Positions 1 through 61,046 of a stretch of 64,000 nucleotides of DNA are shown one piece after another (position 1 is the stretch's first letter; each line of letters opens with the position of its first letter). A model generated the notes under the pieces. That model saw only the letters and a program-made list of their open reading frames with translations. It was not told the DNA's origin and ran no database searches. The stretch is from Mizuhopecten yessoensis (taxonomy: Eukaryota): positions 1,416,820 to 1,480,819 of the forward strand of contig NW_018408902.1 of the NCBI RefSeq assembly GCF_002113885.1. The letters are read 5' to 3'. Position numbers and translations under genes: made by a program.

Positions 1-3000
1 GGTACTCCTGATGTGGACGGTGGAATTCTGCTCCACCTCCCGTCAACGTCTAAAGAGTACATTACACTAGAGGTAAGACTATGGTACTCCTGATGTGGAC
101 GGTGGAATTCTGCTCCACCTCCCGTCAACGTCTAAAGAGTACATTACACTAGAGGTAAGACTATGGTACTCCTGATGTGGACGGTGGAATTCTGCTCCAC
201 CTCCCGTCAACGTCTAAAGAGTACATTACACTAGAGGTAAGACTATGGTACTCCTGATGTGGACGGTGGAATTCTGCTCCACCTCCCGTCAACGTCTAAA
301 GAGTACATTACACTAGAGGTAAGACTATGGTACTCCTGATGTGGACGGTGGAATTCTGCTCCACCTCCCGTCAACGTCTAAAGAGTACATTACACTAGAG
401 GTAAGACTATGGTACTCCTGATGTGGACGGTGGAATTCTGCTCCACCTCCCGTCAACGTCTAAAGAGTACATTACACTAGAGGTAAGACTATGGTACTCC
501 TGATGTGGACGGTGGAATTCTGCTCCACCTCCCGTCAACGTCTAAAGAGTACATTACACTAGAGGTAAGACTATGGTACTCCTGATGTGGACGGTGGAAT
601 TCTGCTCCACCTCCCGTCAACGTCTAAAGAGTACATTACACTAGAGGTAAGACTATGGTACTCCTGATGTGGACGGTGGAATTCTGCTCCACCTCCCGTC
701 AACGTCTAAAGAGTACATTACACTAGAGGTAAGACTATGGTACTCCTGATGTGGACGGTGGAATTCTGCTCCACCTCCCGTCAACGTCTAAAGAGTACAT
801 TACACTAGAGGTAAGACTATGGTACTCCTGATGTGGACGGTGGAATTCTGCTCCACCTCCCGTCAACGTCTAAAGAGTACATTACACTAGAGGTAAGACT
901 ATGGTACTCCTGATGTGGATGGTGGAATTCTGCTCCACCTCCCGTCAACGTCTAAAGAGTACATTACACTAGAGGTAAGACTATGGTACTCCTGATGTGG
1001 ATGGTGGAATTCTGCTCCACCTCCCGTCAACGTCAAAAGAGTAAATAACACTAGAGGTAAGACTATGGTACTCTTGATGTGGATGGTGGAATTCTGCTCC
1101 ACTGCGCGTCAACGTCTAAAGAGTAAATTACACTAGAGGTAAGACTATGGTACTCCTGATGTGGATGGTGGAATTCTGCTCCACCTCCCGTCAACATCTA
1201 AAGAGTACATTACACTAGAGGTAAGACTGTGGTACTTTTGATGTGGACGGTGGAATTCTGCTCCACCTCCCTTCCACGTCTAAAGAGTGCATTACACTAG
1301 AGGTAAGACTAGGGTACTCCTGATGTGGACATTGGAATTCTTCTCCACCTCCCGTCAACATCTAAAGAGTACATTACACTAGAGGGAAGACTATGGTACT
1401 CCTTATGTGGACCGTGGAATTCTGCTCCACCTCCTGTCGACGTCTAAAGAGTACATTCCACTGGAGGTAAGACTATGGTACTAAAGAGTACATTACACTA
1501 GAGGTAAGACCATGGTACTCCTGATGTGGTCCCTGGAATTCTGCTCCACCGCCCGTCCATGTCTAAAGAGTTCATTACACTAGAGGTAAGACTAGTGGAA
1601 TTCTGCTCCACCAAAGAGCACATTACACTAGAGGTAAGACTATGGTACTCCTGATGTGGACCCTGGAATTCTGCTCCACCTCCTGTCCACGTCTAAAGAG
1701 TACATTACACTAGAGGTAAGACTCGGGTACTCCTGATGTGTACTGTGGAATTCTGCTCCACCTCTCGTCAACGTCTAAAGAGAACATTACACTAGAGGTA
1801 AGACTATGGAACTCCTGATGTGGACCCTGGAATTCTGCTCCACCTCCTGTCCACGTCTAAGGAGTACATTACACTAGAGGTAAGACTATGGTTCTCCTGA
1901 TGTGGACGGTGGAATTCTTCTCCCCCGCCCATCAACGTCTAAAGAGTAAATTACACTAGAGGTAAGACTAGGGTACTCCTGATGTGGACGGTGGAATTCT
2001 TCTCCCCCGCCCATCAACGTCTAAAGAGTAAATTACACTAGAGGTAAGACTATGGTACTCCGGATGTGGACGGTGGAATTCTGCTCCACCTCCCATCAAC
2101 GTCTTATGGTACTCCTGATGTGGATGGTGGAATTCTGCTCCACCTCCCATCAACGTCTAAAGAGCACATTACACTAGAGGTAAGACTATAGTACTCCTGA
2201 TGTGGACCCTGGAATTCTGCTCCACCTCCTGTCTACGTCTAAAGAGTACATTACACTAGAGGTAAGACTCGGGTACTCCTGATGTGTACTGTGGAATTCT
2301 GCTCCACCTCTCGTCAACGTCTAAAGAGAACATTACACTAGAGGTAAGACTATGGAACTCCTGATGTGGACCCTGGAATTCTGCTCCACCTCCTGTCCAC
2401 GTCTAAAGAGTACATTACACTAGAGGTAAGACTAGGGTACTCCTGATGTGGACGGGGGAATTCTGCTCCACCTCTCGTCAACGTCTAAAGAGTACATTAC
2501 ACTAGAGGAAAGACTATGGTACTCCTGATGTGGACGGTGGAATTCTGCTCCACCCCCCGTCCATGTCTAAAGAGTACATTACACTAGAGGTAAGTCTATG
2601 GTACTCCTGATGTGGACGGTGGAATTCTGCTCCACCCCCCGTCCATGTCTAAAGAGTACATTACACTAGAGGTAAGACTATGGTACTCCTGATGTGGACG
2701 GTGGAATTCTTCTCCACCTCCCGTCAACGTCTAAAGAGTACATTACACTAGAGGTGTCTGGTACTCCTGATGTGGACGGTGGGATTCTGCTCCACCTCCC
2801 ATCAACATCTAAAGATTACATTACACTAGAGGTAAGACTATGGTACTCCTGATGTGGACGGTGGAATTCTGCTCCACCTCCCATTAAACGTCTAAAGAGT
2901 ACATTACACTAGAGGTAAGACTATGGTACTCCTGATGTGGACGGTGGAATTCTGCTCCACCTCCCATCAACATCTAAAGATTACATTACACTAGAGGTAA

Positions 3001-4140
3001 GACTATGGTACTCCTGATGTGGACCGTGGAATTCTGCTCCACCTCCCGTCCACGTCTAAAGAGTACATTACACTAGAGGTAAGTCTATGGTTCTTCTGAT
3101 GTGGACGGTGGAATTCTGCTCCACCTCCCATCAACGTCTAAAGAGGACATTACACTAGAGGTGAGACTGTGGTACTCCTGATGTGGACGGTGGAATTCTG
3201 CTCCACCTCCCATCAACATCTAAAGAGAACATTACACTAGAGGTAAGACTATGGTACTCCTGATGTAGACCGTGGAATTCTGCTCCACCTCCCGTCCACG
3301 TCTAAAGAGTACAATACACTAGAGGTAAGTCTATGGTTCTTCTGATGCGGACGGTGGAATTCTGCTCCACCTCCCATCAACATCTAAAGATTACATTACA
3401 CTAGAGGTAAGACTATGGTGCTCCTGATGTGGACCGTGGAATTCTGCTCCACCACCCGTCCACGTCTAAAGAGTACATTACACTAGAGGTGAGACTGTTG
3501 TTCTTCTGATGTGGATGGTGGAATTCTGCTCCACCTCCCATCAACGTCAAAAGAGTACATTACACTAGAGGTGAGACTGTTGTTCTTCTGATGTGGATGG
3601 TGGAATTCTGCTCCACCTCCCATCAACGTCAAAAGAGTACATTACACTAGAGGTGAGACTGTTGTTCTTCTGATGTGGATGGTGGAATTCTGCTCCACCT
3701 CCCATCAACGTCAAAAGAGTACATTACACTAGAGGTGAGACTGTGGTACTCCTGATGTGGATGGTGGAATTCTGCTCCCCCTCCCATCAACGTCTAAAGA
3801 GTACATTACACTAGAGGTGAGACTGTGGTACTCCCGATGTGGACGGTGGAATTCTGCTCCACCTCCCGTCCACGTCTAAAGAGGACATTACACTAGAGGT
3901 GAGACTGTGGTACTCCTGATGTGGATGGGGGAATTCTGCTCCACCTCCCATCAACGGCTAAAGAGTACATTACACTAGAGGTGAGACTATGGGAATTCTG
4001 CTCCACCTCCCATCAACATCTAAAGATTACATTACACTAGAGGTGAGACTATGGTACTCCTGATGTGGACGGGGGAATTCTGCTCCACCTCCCGTCCACG
4101 TCTAAAGAGTACATTACACTAGAGGTGAGACTATGGTACT
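1..4140 (+). repeat. 82-bp minisatellite (~50 copies, runs off the left edge) derived from a cadherin exon end plus 5' splice site
   Basis: Unit ggtactcctgatgtggacggtggaattctgctccacctcccgtcaacgtctaaagagtacattacactagaggtaagactat; next unit starts at 83. The first ~11 copies are identical and later copies diverge. Confidence 0.97.
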
Positions 4141-4791
4141 TTCATACAAATGTGCTTGACAAACTGTCTTGAATTAACTGGCTATGTGTTACTTCTGGTC
4201 ATAGCAACATAGAATGCTATGTTGAATAGAATACCTTCATTGTAGTCTTAGACTGTTAGTGGTTTTAAACATTTTAACATGTTAAAATTAGAGGTGTGGT
4301 CCTCTTGGCACATTTCTGTACAAAGTTGGTAAATTTCTAACACTGACAAAAAAATAAACTGAAAGTTTTGTATTTTTGTATTTTTTTTTTATAATTGGGA
4401 CTTTGTGGTGACACCTTGATAATCAGTGGCAAGAAGATGGAATTAATGGCAGAGGGAAGACAACTCTCTTTGATTCACTAACCTTTCATTTGAATCTATC
4501 CTTTTTTGTATTGTGATGTTTTGAAATGGCTGATGACTATATTTGGTTGTAAACTGACAGTACAATGTTGCAAAATACATGCCCAAAAATATGAAGGCTT
4601 AGTTAGATTTTATCCCGAGAAATGGTGCCCAAATTAATTAGAAATCATTAAAGTTTTAAGGAAATTTGTACAAAAAACCTTACTCATGATTGTGCAGAAA
4701 TTTCTTTTAAGAAAAAAATGCTACTTCTATTAATTAAGCCTAATGTCAGTTTATGAAGTGATGTACTGAGTATCTATGACAACTATTTCAG

Positions 4792-5095
4792 ATCGTAAAC
4801 AATCACCTACAAGTGACCTACAACCTAAAGGACCATGATGCACCCCTGATGCCTAACGTTCTGTCTCTGTCGTCTGTCCCAGCCAACAATGGACAGTGGC
4901 ATCATGTCAAGTTCACTCGCACTGGCAAATGGTTCCAGCTCAAGATGGATGGAGGGGAAGGTCGTTATTACAACGAGACCTGGGGCAAATTCGGAGAGAG
5001 TCAGAAGTTTAGTCTGCGGAGTGACCAGATTGTGGCTGGAGCTCGCGTTGTGTTTGATGCAACTCCCTCATTTGATAAACGTGGTCTCAAAGACA
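4792..5095 (+). CDS. Classical (neural/type III-like) cadherin, internal exon: laminin-G domain
   Basis: tttcag acceptor at 4790-91, gtaagt donor at 5096. Translates IVNNHLQVTYNL...NNGQWHHVKFTRTGKWFQLKMDGG, with the LamG DGxWH-type motif. Confidence 0.9.
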
Positions 5096-5573: not shown

Positions 5574-5778
5574 CCTGCATCACAGATATCCGAGTGGATG
5601 ATTTGTGGTTCCCGATGCGCGTGGAAGAAAACCTTCACAGCCCTGCAGCAAACCTTTCCCTATACCCCAATGTCCAGATGAACTGTGTCCGTGACAACGA
5701 CTGTACGGGCCACCTCTGTTCAAGTGGCATCCCAATCAGTAAAGAGTGTGTGCCTCTCTGGGGCGACAGAGACTGTAG
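5574..5778 (+). CDS. Cadherin exon: end of LamG (CITDIRV) and EGF-like repeat
   Basis: ttccag acceptor, gtaagt donor at 5779. Phase 1/2 is consistent with the flanking exons; Cys-rich translation. Confidence 0.9.
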
Positions 5779-5919
5779 GTAAGTCATGAAGGGTGCAGGG
5801 CTGATAGGGACTGTAGTTAAATCATGGAGGGGAGCAGGGCTGATAGGGACTGTAGCTAAATCATGGAGGGGAGCAGGGCTGATAGGGACTGTAGCTAAAT
5901 CATGGAGGGGAGCAGGGCT
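5765..5919 (+). repeat. 39-bp tandem repeat (~4 units) seeded on the exon/donor junction
   Basis: gacagagactgtag|gtaagtcatg... is repeated as gatagggactgtag(t/c)taaatcatggaggggagcagggct. Confidence 0.85.
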
Positions 5920-6007: not shown

Positions 6008-6252
6008 GTGTCCAGCCGGCAGTGAGCCTGGGACTGCGGAGAACTGTATCCCGATTATCTACTGTAAACCCAACCCTTGTTACTCGGGCGGAACATGTAT
6101 AGAGCTCGACTACCCAGACACCTTCATGTGTAACTGTCCCATAGGATGGACAGGTACACTCTGTAACCAACAGGCGCAGTCAGAGGTCATCCCAGCTGGG
6201 GTCACGACAGAAGCACTCGTCATTATCATCGTCAGCATCTTCACCGTCGCAC
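6008..6252 (+). CDS. Cadherin exon: EGF repeat and start of transmembrane helix
   Basis: ctacag acceptor, gtaagt donor at 6253. Translates CKPNPCYSGGTC...CNCPIGWTGTLC, then ALVIIIVSIFTVA. Confidence 0.92.
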
Positions 6253-7762: not shown

Positions 7763-8025
7763 TGCGCCCTGGTGAGACTCCAGATGTTGGAAGTTTCATA
7801 GAAGACCGCCTGATTGATGCTGACAGTGACTCAAATGCTCCTCCCCACGACAACGTCATGGAGTTCGCGTACGAGGGCGGGGACAGCGACCTGGGGTCAT
7901 TGAGTTCACTCCACACAAGTTCCAGTGGCGGGGACCAGGACTACGAGTACCTAGATGACTGGGGACCAAAGTTCTCCAAACTAGCAGACATGTACCAATC
8001 AGTTCCCACTGAGGACCATTTGTGA
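7763..8025 (+). CDS. Cadherin last coding exon: beta-catenin-binding C-terminus
   Basis: Translates [24 protein letters not shown]...FAYEG...GSLSSL...[21 protein letters not shown]; TGA at 8023-8025. Confidence 0.96.
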
Positions 8026-11000: not shown

Positions 11001-11689
11001 ATTATTACAGGGTATATTAATTTGTAATTCTTCATTACTATTGTCTCAGAAAAATTTATCATTCTTAATTTTTTTGGGGTTGATATAGAATTATAGAAAA
11101 TATATTTTCATCCGTCTCCATTGTTTTCAAATGTTCAAAACTTGAGTTTCATACATAAGAAGAAGTGTGTGAGTGTAACAGACACAATTTAGACTGTTGT
11201 CCTTCACATAACAAGTTTGGTCGGTAATTCAAAGGAGTTTTAATTAAGCGGTGTGGTTGTGAATTGATGTGTGCAATATTCCACGCTAATTTATATCATC
11301 ATCACCAAACAATTTTGATGCATGATGAGAATGTGTTTAAACATTTCCCCCAAGTAAATTTGTCATATACGTGGCTTTTAAAGCTTATGATTATGTTGAA
11401 ATTCAGGTGCTTTGAGATTTCTTTTTAATATTGGTACCATGTGTAAATTATGCAAAGTTTTTTGCGTCCTTTGTAATAAGTTTGTCTTCGGCTGTATTTG
11501 TTGGTATAGCTAAGAGTTGATTTTAATCTACGGTACGTGTCATCTTGTTGTTGCTTACTTAACAGTGGAATCCGCTCATTGTAATATCCTGTTTGTCTGA
11601 ACTTGTTACTTTGACTAAAACAGTTTTGACAGGTATGTTATATCAAAGGAAATGTGATATTAGCAGAAATATTACATAAATGAAAATGT

Positions 11690-11998
11690 GTCATTAAAGG
11701 GAATGTGACATTACCAGGAATATTATATTAACCAAAATGTTACATTAAGGTAATTATTACATTAACAGGAATATGACTTAACCAAAATGTTACATTAAAG
11801 GGAAAGTAAGTTACATTAAAAGGAATATGACATTACCTAAGTGTTACATTAAATGGAAAGTAAGTTACATTAAAAGGAATATGACATTACCTGAGTGTTA
11901 CATTAAAGGGGAAGTAAGTTACATTAAAAGGAATATGACATTACCTAAGCGTTACATTAAAGGGAAAGTAAGTTACATTAAATGGAATATGACATTAA
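11690..11998. repeat. 54-bp minisatellite, ~4 good and several degenerate copies
   Basis: Recurring ggaatatgacattacc...gttacattaaa...agtaagttacattaaa; 18-aa periodicity in the ORF track. Confidence 0.85.
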
Positions 11999-13123
11999 CG
12001 TTTATTACAAAACAGGAACCTTCATTATTTTACTTAGATACTCGGGTAAAAATTGTTGAATTGGGAATAGGAACACAGTACCTATAGCATAATTTAAAGG
12101 TGTCTTTTGTTATTTAATTTGTCCAGGTTAACTTCAATGTTTTATTGGATGAAAAGTGCCAATTCTGGTAAGTTTTAATAAATGTAGTATACGTTTGGAT
12201 ATTACACTTCGTGGAAGCCACTGTAGTAAAATGAGAGAGATGTTACATACAAGAGCATAATATTTGTATAAGATCTGATGATCTTGAACTTGCCATGGTA
12301 GAATTGGTTATAGATAGAAATAATTTATCCGTGTCCTCAATGAAATGAAATATAAGGACCAGCTTATTTAGAAAATGTAAAATAGCAACAGAGTAGCTTA
12401 TGAGAAACTATGATTTGGTTAATTTTCCTTGTTCTAGTTTGTTAACTCTTTATATCATTGGTTGTGAACTTTGACCTACATGTAGTTTATAGTTTGTATG
12501 TCAGTATCGTTATTGTAGATATGTGGATTAAAGCTATTCATACTTTCAAGCTTCTTCAACAATGATGAACATCTCAGTACTTCTAATATAATAGTACAAA
12601 ATGCAATTTGATTAAATAACTCATCTAAATCATTCAGTCGTAAAATGTATTTGGCGAAATGTTTTCCAAATTTCATAATACTGTAGGTGCCGCTAGAGCT
12701 AAAGGTTAACAAGAAAAACAATTGATAATACATATAGTAGTCAGTACTGTATTGGCTGTATTTGGTGCCCATGTGATTTGCAAATATTCCGTCTTTGCGT
12801 ATTGCAGAGTTATCTTCTCTTGGGAGCAGGTATTGACTGTTACGTCATTGGTTTGTGTGAGAAAATTACGTCGTTTTCTCAAAAATTGATGACGTTACTC
12901 TCACAAACAAGTGACGTAACAATCAATACCTGCTCCCAAGAGAAGATAACTCTGCAATACGCAAAGACGGAATATTGGGACACTTGATAACAATTGTTTT
13001 AAAACAAAAAATTTGTTTGTTTTTCTGCTTTGAAGATAAACGTCTTCTCAGCATTTGACAGATAATTTCTATTTAGTTATGATAATGTCACCATATCAGG
13101 TTGTTGTTAAATGCCCTTCTTAC

Positions 13124-13560
13124 ATAAAGATATTGGTGCTCCTTGCTGGGGAGCCATCAATAAAGATATTGGTGCTCATTGCTGGGGAGCCATCAATAAA
13201 GATATTAGTGTTCCTTGCTGGGGAGCCATCAATAAAGATATTGGTGCTCCTTGCTGGGGAGCCATCAATAAAGATATTGGTGATCCTTGCTAGGGAGCCA
13301 TCAATAAAGATATTGGTGCTCATTGCTTGGGAGCCATCAATAAAGAAAGATATTGGTGCTCCTTGCTGGGGAGCCATCAATAAAGATATTGGTGATCCTT
13401 GCTAGGGAGCCATCAATAAAGATATTGGTGCTCATTGATTGGGAGCCATCAATAAAGATATTGGTGCTCCTTGCTGGGGAGCCATCAATAAAGATAATGG
13501 TGCTCCTTGCTGGGGAGCCATCAATAAAGATATTGGTGCTCCTTGCTGGGGAGCCATCAA
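13124..13560. repeat. 36-bp minisatellite, ~12 copies, almost all carrying AATAAA
   Basis: Unit gatattggtgctccttgctggggagccatcaataaa. Confidence 0.95.
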
Positions 13561-13639
13561 CAACAACAGTAGAGGTAAACATTCCCACATATTGGCAGCA
13601 GGATGAGAGAAGATGACATGTATTATCAAAGAAGGGTGA

Positions 13640-14455
13640 GGCGCTACAGCAAATACGGTACTGTAAATATACACATATAAAAAGTTAAGGCACTACAGCA
13701 AATACGGTACCGTTAATATAATACAAAAAGTCTGTGCACTACAGCAAGTACGGTACTGTAAAAATACTTTACAAAAAGTTAAGACACTACAGCAAATAGG
13801 GTACGGTAAATATATGCATACAAACAGTTAAGGCACTACAGCAAATACAGTACCGTACTGTAAATAGAATATAAAAAGTTCAGACACTACAGCAAAAACA
13901 GTACCGTAAATATACACATACAAAAAGTTAAGGCACTACAGCAAATACAGTACCGTACTGTAAATAGAATATAAAAAGTTCAGACACTACAGCAAAAACA
14001 GTACCGTAAATATACACATACAAAAAGTTAAGGCACTACAGCAAATACGGTACCGTTAATATACACATACAAAAAGTCTGTGCACTGCAGCAAGTACGGT
14101 ACTGTAAAAATACTTTACAAAAAGTTAAGACACTACAGCAAATACGGTTCGGTAAATATACACATACAAACAGTTAAGACACTACAGCAAATACAGTACC
14201 GTACCGTAAATAGAATATAAAAAGTTCAGACACTACAGCAAATACGGTACTGTAAATATATGCATACAAAAAATTAAGGCACTACAGCAAATATGGTACC
14301 GTAAATAGAATATAAAAAGTTCAGGCGCTACAGCAAATATGGTACTATAAATATATGCATACAAAAAGTTTAGGCGCTACAGCAAATCTGTAAATATATA
14401 CACATTCAAAAAGTTATGGCGATAAAGCAAATACAGTACCGTAAATATACACAAA
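13640..14455. repeat. ~49-bp minisatellite, ~16 copies
   Basis: Unit approximately aaaaagttaaggcactacagcaaatacggtaccgtaaatatacacatac; contains the palindrome tacggtaccgta. Confidence 0.9.
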
Positions 14456-60907: not shown

Positions 60908-61046
60908 NNNNNNNNNNNNNNNNNNNNNNNNNNNNNNNNNNNNNNNNNNNNNNNNNNNNNNNNNNNNNNNNNNNNNNNNNNNNNNNNNNNNNNNNNNNNN
61001 NNNNNNNNNNNNNNNNNNNNNNNNNNNNNNNNNNNNNNNNNNNNNN
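60908..61046. other. Assembly gap (139 N)
   Basis: Run of N. Confidence 0.99.

What the first reader, a model, noticed from the sequence alone, without database searches (positions are those of the whole stretch)
1..4140. Minisatellite made of ~50 copies of the cadherin's own exon end plus 5' splice site
Seen: read from base 1, the unit encodes GTPDVDGGILLHLPSTSKEYITLE (72 nt) followed by GTAAGA, a strong donor (GT at 73). The next real exon starts in phase 0 with IVNNHLQVTYNL. Known: the join ...DGGILL...EYITLE|IVNNHLQVTYNL fits the LamG pattern (RT..DGLLL..DY(I/L)xLE(I/L)xNGxL..xYNLG). Seen: the unit is 82 bp, so reading past the first donor gives VRLWYS then TGA (91-93). Inference: the intron begins with a >4-kb array of decoy exon ends and donors, and only the most 5' donor makes protein. 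Any distal donor would give a premature stop, meaning NMD or a secreted cadherin lacking its TM domain. Copy number could act as a tunable knob on cadherin output, and the locus is a natural test of how the spliceosome chooses among identical donors. I do not know of this being described for this gene, but cannot check.
Basis: partly seen in the sequence, partly recalled or inferred. Interest (0 to 1): 0.8.

Follow-up and report, generated by a model that had tools for sequence, protein, structure and literature searches.

The report
Intron minisatellite copying exon end and donor
An intron of an invertebrate cadherin gene starts with about 59 tandem copies of the preceding exon's last 71 bases plus its splice donor; this is a real and unusually large example of a kind already described (amphioxus "mirages", human F7, LMNB2 and IFI6 introns), not a new mechanism.

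Summary
The 82-bp array starts 737 bp left of the window, at the true 3' end of a LamG exon (...FRTRDADGGILLHLPSTSKEYITLE|gtaaga). It runs 4,876 bp: one authentic donor and 59 decoy sites, 57 still with GT. It fills 88% of a 5,457-nt intron.

Three related species and the in-genome paralogue have the same exon boundary, but introns of only about 300-670 nt and no array. The array is therefore a lineage-specific local duplication. A 5-bp microhomology (GTACT) flanks it.

Splicing from any decoy donor keeps VRLWYS-TGA in frame, so only the first donor can give full-length cadherin. That the first donor is the one used is inferred from precedent, not shown. No RNA data were available.

The architecture is known: human F7 IVS7, IFI6, CBS, LMNB2 and PDGFA (PMC1557585) and amphioxus "mirages" (PMC3087553). 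The "tunable knob" idea is untested.

Copy number is uncertain. Fifteen units are identical, and an unplaced 532-bp contig holds variant units.

Four more introns of this gene begin with donor-spanning arrays. Other first readers of this scan noted similar arrays elsewhere in this genome; I did not check those.

The parts
1..4140 (+). Window part of the 82-bp junction-derived minisatellite: 50.5 of 59.5 units. The array starts 737 bp upstream of the window, at L001 1093. Each unit is the last 71 nt of exon A plus the first 11 nt of the intron (gtaagactatg).
   Evidence: TRF. Own-genome DNA search. Unit-by-unit parse. Donor 9-mers: 44 GAGGTAAGA, 10 GAGGTGAGA, 3 GAGGTAAGT, 2 with GT lost, 1 deleted.
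4136..4140 (+). GTACT at the 3' edge of the array. The same 5 bases start the duplicated stretch inside exon A (L001 1093-1097). This is microhomology at the duplication breakpoints.
   Evidence: Direct reading; printed side by side.
4141..4791 (+). Non-repetitive remainder of the intron (651 nt), ending in the acceptor ...ctatttcag. It is similar in size to the whole orthologous intron in relatives.
   Evidence: Ortholog introns are 304 nt (L011), 672 nt (L012) and about 536 nt (L014). The paralogue's is about 329 nt.
4792..5095 (+). Exon B, phase 0 start, IVNNHLQVTYNL...: the middle of the membrane-proximal LamG domain.
   Evidence: Translation. Pfam Laminin_G_2 E=6.3e-9, profile positions 25-88. 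Ortholog alignment A3.
5574..5778 (+). Exon C: end of the LamG domain and a Cys-rich stretch. Donor TAG|GTAAGT.
   Evidence: Direct reading. The L011 ortholog has the same exon.
5771..5919 (+). A second, small junction-spanning array: 39 bp x 3.8. The first unit is the last 8 nt of exon C plus its donor. Later copies have lost the GT (TT or CT).
   Evidence: TRF; sequence.
6008..6252 (+). Exon D: an EGF-like domain and the start of the transmembrane segment.
   Evidence: Pfam EGF E=5e-9; hydrophobic run VTTEALVIIIVSIFTVA read.
7819..7998 (+). Exon encoding the classical-cadherin cytoplasmic domain. It identifies the host gene.
   Evidence: PF01049 match at 89.5 bits, over the cut-off, at C5575:1424638-1424817.

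Best explanation
This is a locally born intronic minisatellite of the "mirage" or F7-IVS7 type.

**Origin (inferred).** An 82-bp segment straddling the exon A/intron junction of a classical cadherin gene was duplicated in tandem. The segment is 71 nt of a LamG-coding exon plus gtaagactatg. The duplication lies between two GTACT microhomologies, probably by replication slippage. It was then amplified by slippage and unequal exchange to about 59 extra units.

**Splicing (inferred).** The pre-mRNA carries one authentic and 57 intact decoy 5' splice sites. The authentic, most upstream donor is most likely chosen because it completes definition of the 179-nt exon A and is made first. The whole array is then removed as intron.

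**What is shown and what is not.** Any use of a decoy keeps an in-frame TGA and should give a transcript that is degraded or non-functional. The array itself is most likely neutral or slightly costly, unstable in length, and without a conserved function. The DNA anatomy and the absence of the array from relatives are shown. The donor choice, the nonsense-mediated decay and the neutrality are inferred.
For: - **Array and its extent:**
- **Local origin:** The first unit is the real exon end (...RTRDADGGILLHLPSTSKEYITLE|gtaaga). It differs from the array consensus at 5 of 82 positions (read).
- **Single locus:** The unit occurs only at this locus plus one unplaced contig.
- **Breakpoints:** GTACT sits at both.
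- **Lineage-specific:** The same exon boundary, with a short intron and no array, is found in L011 (304 nt), L012 (672 nt), L014 (about 536 nt) and the paralogue L023 (about 329 nt).
- **Real turnover:** There is a higher-order repeat (units 30-32 equal units 36-38), and partial units of 37 to 136 nt.
- **Only the first donor can code:** Read-through gives VRLWYS*.
- **LamG continuity:** Exon B enters the LamG profile at position 25, so about 24 residues must come from exon A's end.
- **Precedent:** In F7 IVS7 only the most upstream of identical donors is used, although the others are functional. LMNB2 and PDGFA likewise use only the authentic donor (PMC1557585). In amphioxus, mirages do not disturb splicing (PMC3087553; PMC3902484).
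Against: - No transcript evidence could be obtained, so exclusive use of the first donor is an inference.
- In IFI6 and CBS the first two pseudo-sites are also used.
- Three decoys (GTAAGT) match U1 better than the authentic site, and the last decoy lies only about 670 nt from the acceptor. If short introns here are recognised as units (intron definition), distal donors could compete.
- Copy number is not secure. Fifteen consecutive units are identical, giving 1,291 bp of perfect periodicity. A 532-bp unplaced contig holds units only 93.8% identical to any placed stretch.
- Five of the eight arrays with at least 3 copies in this gene span a donor. Plain neutral drift does not explain that.
Confidence: 0.78

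Rival explanations
1. Assembly artefact or inflation. The array, or much of its length, was produced by the assembler or gap filler looping through a short repeat. The true intron would hold far fewer units.
For: Units 5-19 are identical and give 1,291 bp of perfect 82-bp periodicity. An unplaced 532-bp contig, C61591, consists only of array units and matches no placed stretch better than 93.8%. The genome is fragmented into 82,659 contigs.
Against: There are no Ns in the array. Both ends are anchored in unique sequence. More than 40 units carry their own variants, with higher-order patterns and partial units that a looping artefact would not produce. Four other junction-spanning arrays lie in the same gene.
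Confidence: 0.1
2. Functional regulatory array. The roughly 57 U1-binding sites act as a dose control, or protect the transcript. Decoy splicing followed by nonsense-mediated decay could set cadherin output by copy number. Alternatively, the sites could suppress premature polyadenylation in the intron, or enhance transcription or splicing.
For: 57 of 59 decoys keep GT. The donor changes that spread (A to G at +3, A to T at +6) keep or improve the consensus. Donor-spanning arrays are over-represented in this gene: 5 of 8 arrays, rough binomial P about 3e-5 to 4e-4 (stricter count of 4: 7e-4 to 5e-3). An AATAAA lies just after the array, near window 4345-4350.
Against: The array is absent from three relatives and from the paralogue, so there is no conservation. 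Retention of GT is expected from recent amplification and homogenisation alone. In the 39-bp array after exon C the decoy donors have decayed. In the best-studied case, F7, the pseudo-sites stay silent.
Confidence: 0.08
3. The units are used as coding or alternative exons, for example a repeated protein segment or mutually exclusive exon ends.
For: Each unit keeps an open frame encoding GTPDVDGGILLHLPSTSKEYITLE.
Against: The unit is 82 nt, which is not a multiple of 3. Read-through stops after 6 codons. Units have no acceptor context: only 8 of the 20 bases before the AG|GT are pyrimidines (read). Orthologues have a single copy of this segment in the LamG domain.
Confidence: 0.02

Closest known systems
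Human F7 intron 7 VNTR (37 bp x 5-9), with IFI6/6-16 intron 2, CBS IVS13, LMNB2 and PDGFA intron 4 (PMC1557585)
   Same: A minisatellite whose first monomer spans the exon-intron boundary, so the authentic donor is followed by identical pseudo-donors. It is length-polymorphic. The PDGFA unit (81 bp) and the LMNB2 unit (100 bp) are of similar size. In F7, LMNB2 and PDGFA only the authentic, most upstream site is used.
   Different: There are more decoys here (59, against at most 25 in IFI6), and a much longer exonic part in the unit (71 nt, against 4 nt in F7). The animal is an invertebrate, where recognition of introns rather than exons may weigh more. Donor choice is not measured here.
Amphioxus "mirages" (Adh3, TnC, globins BflGb6/9, PGBD5; PMC3087553, PMC3902484)
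   Same: Minisatellite-like tandem duplications of exon-intron boundaries, recurrent in one genome. Units are 10-160 bp. Interior units are homogenised and edge units are more diverged. They do not appear to disturb normal splicing.
   Different: This genome is not amphioxus-like at this locus: the cadherin keeps its cadherin repeats. All five arrays seen here span donors and none spans an acceptor, whereas both kinds occur in amphioxus. The copy number here is far higher than the 3-6 units reported for BflGb6. I found no report for molluscs or other lophotrochozoans, but the searchable library is incomplete.
Intron gain by tandem duplication of an AGGT-containing segment (Rogers model, cited in PMC3087553; PMC4974935)
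   Same: A tandem duplication that reiterates a splice signal.
   Different: No new intron is created here. An existing intron is lengthened from about 0.66 kb to 5.46 kb.

Membership tests
Junction-spanning intronic minisatellite ("mirage" / F7-IVS7 type) | Head-to-tail array of a unit of 10 bp or more inside a gene | tested here: met
   82-bp unit, 59.5 copies, 83-91% matches.
Junction-spanning intronic minisatellite ("mirage" / F7-IVS7 type) | The first monomer contains the authentic exon-intron boundary | tested here: met
   Exon A (L001 984-1162) ends inside the first unit. The boundary sits at the same position in L011, L012, L014 and the paralogue L023.
Junction-spanning intronic minisatellite ("mirage" / F7-IVS7 type) | The splice-site sequence is reiterated in the following monomers | tested here: met
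   57 of 59 copies keep GT: 43 GAG|GTAAGA identical to the authentic site, 10 GTGAGA, 3 GTAAGT and one broken by a deletion (GAG|GTGTCT).
Junction-spanning intronic minisatellite ("mirage" / F7-IVS7 type) | The mature mRNA uses the authentic, outermost site and the pseudo-sites stay silent or minor | not testable with these tools
   No transcript data were reachable. This is inferred only from the in-frame TGA and from precedent.
Junction-spanning intronic minisatellite ("mirage" / F7-IVS7 type) | Length instability or polymorphism | tested here: inconclusive
   An unplaced contig, C61591, holds variant units. It may be a second allele or unresolved assembly. No population data.
Non-chordate classical cadherin (cadherin repeats - EGF/LamG - TM - catenin-binding tail) | Cadherin repeats upstream | tested here: met
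   Ten upstream + strand open frames carry DxNDxxP or LDRE-type motifs, for example ...VRAEDNDRGPNGQITY. This is motif level only, not a Pfam scan.
Non-chordate classical cadherin (cadherin repeats - EGF/LamG - TM - catenin-binding tail) | Membrane-proximal LamG and EGF domains, a TM segment and the cadherin cytoplasmic domain | tested here: met
   Laminin_G_2 6.3e-9 and EGF 5e-9. PF01049 at 89.5 bits at window 7819-7998.
Recursive splice sites (zero-length exon, YnNCAG|GTAAGT) | A polypyrimidine tract and AG directly before a regenerated donor | tested here: not met
   AG|GTAAGA is present in each unit, but only 8 of the 20 preceding bases are pyrimidines (read).

The most novel reading that the evidence does not exclude
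In this, probably molluscan, genome, 5' splice sites may be preferred seeds for minisatellites. That would be a lophotrochozoan counterpart of amphioxus "mirages", but biased to donors. The cause would be either a mutational process tied to the exon-intron junction or selection for reiterated U1 sites. With 57 intact, near-identical decoys over 4.8 kb, the cadherin array would then be the most extreme natural substrate known for testing how a spliceosome picks one donor among many.
Probability: 0.25. Interest if true: 0.6.

Novelty: new member of a known kind. Interest (0 to 1): 0.35.

Why it matters
This adds a very large example, outside chordates, to the small set of genes whose intron reiterates its own exon-intron junction.

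If transcripts confirm that only the first of about 58 usable donors is chosen, the 5'-to-3' "first site wins" rule shown for human F7 would extend to an invertebrate and to a roughly ten-fold larger array.

The practical value is for annotation. Such arrays produce false exon ends for gene predictors, and they mark places where assembled intron length should not be trusted.

The recurrence of donor-spanning arrays within one gene hints at a genome-wide process. It deserves a proper survey against an annotation.

Tried and rejected
- **Transcript evidence.** A word-based protein search with exon B returned only exon-sized calls on genomic contigs and no junction-spanning cDNA products. They did give three orthologous loci.
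- **One look-up not sent.** The look-up for P0004 was not sent because the queue was full.
- **Exon A against Pfam.** Exon A alone gives no Pfam hit: 59 aa is too short.
- **Joined exon model.** I did not search a joined exon A+B model. The exons were searched separately.
- **Dispersed satellite or transposon origin.** Rejected. The unit is found only at this locus and on one unplaced contig.
- **Recursive splice sites.** Rejected. There is no pyrimidine tract before the AG|GT.
- **Coding repeat.** Rejected. The unit is 82 nt and read-through hits an early stop.
- **Donor motifs as a general property of this genome's minisatellites.** Not supported.
  - In 200 kb sampled along the contig, 47 arrays with at least 3 copies were found.
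  - Only 1 has a donor-like 9-mer, against 4.9 expected from shuffled units.
  - Donor-bearing arrays are therefore a subset tied to exon junctions.
- **Amphioxus origin.** Unlikely. The gene has cadherin repeats; that amphioxus cadherins lack them is from my memory.
- **Species identity.**
  - From memory, the assembly size and contig count resemble the Yesso scallop short-read assembly.
  - A literature search for that gave nothing, so the species is left unverified.
- **The costly representative-protein search.** Not run, because the protein's identity was not in doubt.
- **Structure and complex prediction.** Not relevant here.
Full report
**1. The observation**

The window opens inside a tandem array. 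TRF reports an 82-bp period over window 1-4140, with higher-order periods of 164 and 246 and 83-91% matches.

Read from base 1, the unit encodes GTPDVDGGILLHLPSTSKEYITLE.

A DNA search of the window's own genome shows the array continuing to the left of the window. It also shows that the unit occurs nowhere else, except on a 532-bp unplaced contig.

**2. Where the array really starts**

The upstream sequence (L001; L001 position 1829 = window 1) holds a normal exon, L001 984-1162. It is preceded by ...ttttgtag and translates to TTVRDLKDHGFMSWVLKNEMYNTLQERMISLQMSFRTRDADGGILLHLPSTSKEYITLE. It is followed by gtaagactatg.

- The repeat begins inside this exon at L001 1093 (GTACT...) and ends at window 4140. 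That is 4,876 bp, or 59.5 units.
- The window's first unit is already the ninth or tenth decoy.
- The array ends ...gactatgGTACT|ttcatac. The same GTACT starts the duplicated stretch in the exon. This 5-bp microhomology fits an origin by slippage.

**3. Anatomy of the array**

I parsed 60 donor-like sites.

- Their 9-mers are 44 GAG|GTAAGA (one of them the authentic site), 10 GAG|GTGAGA (the 3'-most units), 3 GAG|GTAAGT, two with GT destroyed (GG, GA), and one broken by a deletion.
- The authentic unit differs from the array consensus at 5 of 82 positions.
- Units 5-19 are identical, giving 1,291 bp of perfect periodicity.
- Units further 3' differ from the consensus at 3-10 positions.
- Units 30-32 recur as units 36-38, which is a higher-order duplication.
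- Partial units of 37, 48, 62, 78, 83 and 136 nt are present.

This is the usual picture of minisatellite turnover, and it argues against a pure assembly loop.

The identical block leaves the true copy number and interior sequence uncertain. So does the unplaced contig, whose 6.5 units match no placed stretch better than 93.8%.

Each unit also folds into a hairpin: GTACTC pairs with GAGTAC, and GGTGGA with TCCACC. For two units as RNA, z = -3.06 against shuffles. This may favour slippage. The donor lies outside the hairpin.

**4. The host gene**

- Exon B (window 4792-5095) matches Laminin_G_2 from profile position 25 (E = 6.3e-9).
- Exon D (6008-6252) has an EGF domain and the start of a transmembrane segment.
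- The cadherin cytoplasmic domain (PF01049, 89.5 bits) lies at window 7819-7998.
- Upstream open frames carry cadherin-repeat motifs.

It is a classical cadherin of the non-chordate type.

Because exon B enters the LamG profile at position 25, the first 24 or so positions must come from the end of exon A (FRTRDADGGILLHLPSTSKEYITLE).

**5. Relatives**

A protein word search with exon B led to genomic contigs of related animals.

| Locus | Exon B identity | Exon A end and donor | Intron | Exon B start | Array |
|---|---|---|---|---|---|
| L011 | 73% | ...MSFRTRTPTGGILLHLPSNTREYITLE, gtaaat | 304 nt | IVDDHLQVTYNL | none |
| L012 | 53% | ...RFRTRDLDGILFHLPSNSDEFITLE, gt | 672 nt | LVNGRLKVLYNLG | none |
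| L014 | 48% | ...EFITLE, gt | about 536 nt | (not fixed exactly) | no array seen in the ORF listing; TRF was not run |
| L023 (in-genome paralogue on C4827) | 37% | ...KFIRLQ, gt | about 329 nt | (same boundary) | none |

Alignments A2 and A3 show the conserved boundary.

The closest relative (L009 and L010, 87% identical) is uninformative. Those contigs stop 298 bp upstream of exon B.

Here the intron is 5,457 nt: 4,806 nt of array and 651 nt of unique sequence. The array is therefore a lineage-specific insertion into an intron of ordinary size.

**6. Consequence for splicing**

From the authentic exon end, the frame reads VRLWYS then TGA. Any transcript spliced from a decoy donor contains that stop. 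Only the first donor can give the LamG-EGF-TM-tail protein. This is shown by the sequence.

That the first donor is actually the one used is inferred, from two things:
- The gene is intact and conserved.
- There is precedent (section 7).

Points against simple silence of the decoys:
- Three are better U1 matches than the authentic site.
- The last decoy is only about 670 nt from the acceptor.
- In IFI6 and CBS the first two pseudo-sites are used as well.

**7. What is already known**

Borensztajn et al. [quoted passage not shown] Their examples are:
- human F7 IVS7 (37 bp x 5-9);
- IFI6 (25 pseudo-sites);
- CBS;
- LMNB2 (100 bp x 10-15);
- PDGFA (81 bp x 16-18).

Using 50 constructs, they show that the pseudo-sites are functional but that the most upstream site is always chosen.

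In amphioxus such arrays are called "mirages". They are seen in Adh3, TnC, globin and PGBD5 genes without aberrant mRNAs (PMC3087553; PMC3902484).

My searches found no report for molluscs or other lophotrochozoans. The library is incomplete, so this is weak evidence of absence.

**8. Recurrence in this gene**

Four other introns of the same cadherin gene start with arrays whose first unit contains the exon end and its donor.

| Place | Unit | Exon end and donor | Note |
|---|---|---|---|
| C5575:1397529-1398545 | 40 bp x 25.6 | ...NQPVGTRVVQ, GTAAGG | The next exon continues VRAEDNDRGPNG |
| near C5575:1408550-1408811 | degenerate 32 bp | ...LAIDKG, gtcagtcagggtca | The weakest case |
| L001 359-670 | 22 bp x 14 | ...NKCDT+A, gtaggtag | |
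| window 5771-5919 | 39 bp x 3.8 | TAG, GTAAGT | Later copies have lost the GT |

- Of the eight arrays with at least 3 copies in the gene, five span a donor and none spans an acceptor.
- Under a rough model (30-40 donors, 80-100-nt target, 41 kb) the binomial P is about 3e-5 to 4e-4 for five of eight. It is about 7e-4 to 5e-3 if the degenerate 32-bp case is left out.
- This model is crude, because I had no annotation.

In 200 kb sampled elsewhere on the contig, minisatellites are very dense: 47 arrays with at least 3 copies. Their units are not enriched for donor-like 9-mers: 1 observed against 4.9 in shuffles. Donors are therefore not a general ingredient of this genome's minisatellites. The donor-bearing arrays are a subset bound to exon junctions.

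Other first readers of this scan noted similar arrays in other genes of this genome. Those are unchecked notes that I did not test.

**9. Verdict**

- The structural interpretation is right.
- The functional ideas are untested.
- The novelty claim fails, because the kind is known.

What stands out is the size (59 copies, 4.9 kb), the long exonic part of the unit, the non-chordate host, and the clustering of five such arrays in one gene.

I took no contig for human. From memory, the assembly statistics resemble the Yesso scallop; this is not verified.

Noticed in passing
G000:C5575:1397529-1398545 (upstream of the window, same gene): A 40-bp x 25.6 array whose first unit is the last 11 nt of a cadherin-repeat exon (...NQPVGTRVVQ) plus its donor GTAAGG. 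It fills about 1.0 kb of a 1.27-kb intron. The next exon continues VRAEDNDRGPNGQITY.
   Followed up: partly
L001 359-670 (= C5575:1415350-1415661), the intron before exon A: A 22-bp x 14 array. The unit is the last 14 nt of the EGF exon (...CAAGTGTGATACAA) plus gtaggtag, so this intron also starts with copies of its own donor.
   Followed up: partly
near G000:C5575:1408550-1408811: A degenerate 32-bp array (GGTCA-rich) that seems to start at the donor of the exon ending ...VEVLAIDKG|gtcagtcagggtca. This is the weakest of the five cases.
   Followed up: partly
window 5771-5919: A 39-bp x 3.8 array starting 8 nt before the exon C donor. The later copies have lost the GT (TT or CT), unlike the 82-bp array.
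   Followed up: partly
G000:C61591:1-532 (L018): An unplaced contig made only of 82-bp units, at best 93.8% identical to any placed part of the array. It is either a second allele or unresolved assembly.
   Followed up: partly
window 2-83 (every unit): Each unit holds an imperfect palindrome: GTACTC pairs with GAGTAC, and GGTGGA with TCCACC. In the true exon the inner stem has a mismatch (GGCGGA), and the array's C-to-T change at a CpG makes it perfect. RNA fold z = -3.06 for two units.
   Followed up: partly
L032 2924-3619, L036 2360-3434, L038 2869-3621, L042 1451-2460 (samples of contig C5575): The same 145-bp tandem family turns up at four of twenty random 10-kb samples. This suggests a dispersed satellite or a repeat carried by a transposon. 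Minisatellites overall are very dense, about one array with at least 3 copies per 4 kb.
   Followed up: no
window 11635-11999, 13124-13560, 13639-14453: Three further minisatellites (54, 36 and 49 bp units) downstream of the cadherin cytoplasmic-domain exon. None was tied to an exon.
   Followed up: no
window 60908-61046: A run of 139 N (assembly gap or masked), left as it is. A CAT microsatellite and a 41-bp repeat follow directly.
   Followed up: no
L012 17375-20423 (related species, ENA contig): A 156-bp x 19.7 tandem array lies about 7 kb downstream of the orthologous LamG exon in the distant relative. Large minisatellites are therefore common in that genome too.
   Followed up: no
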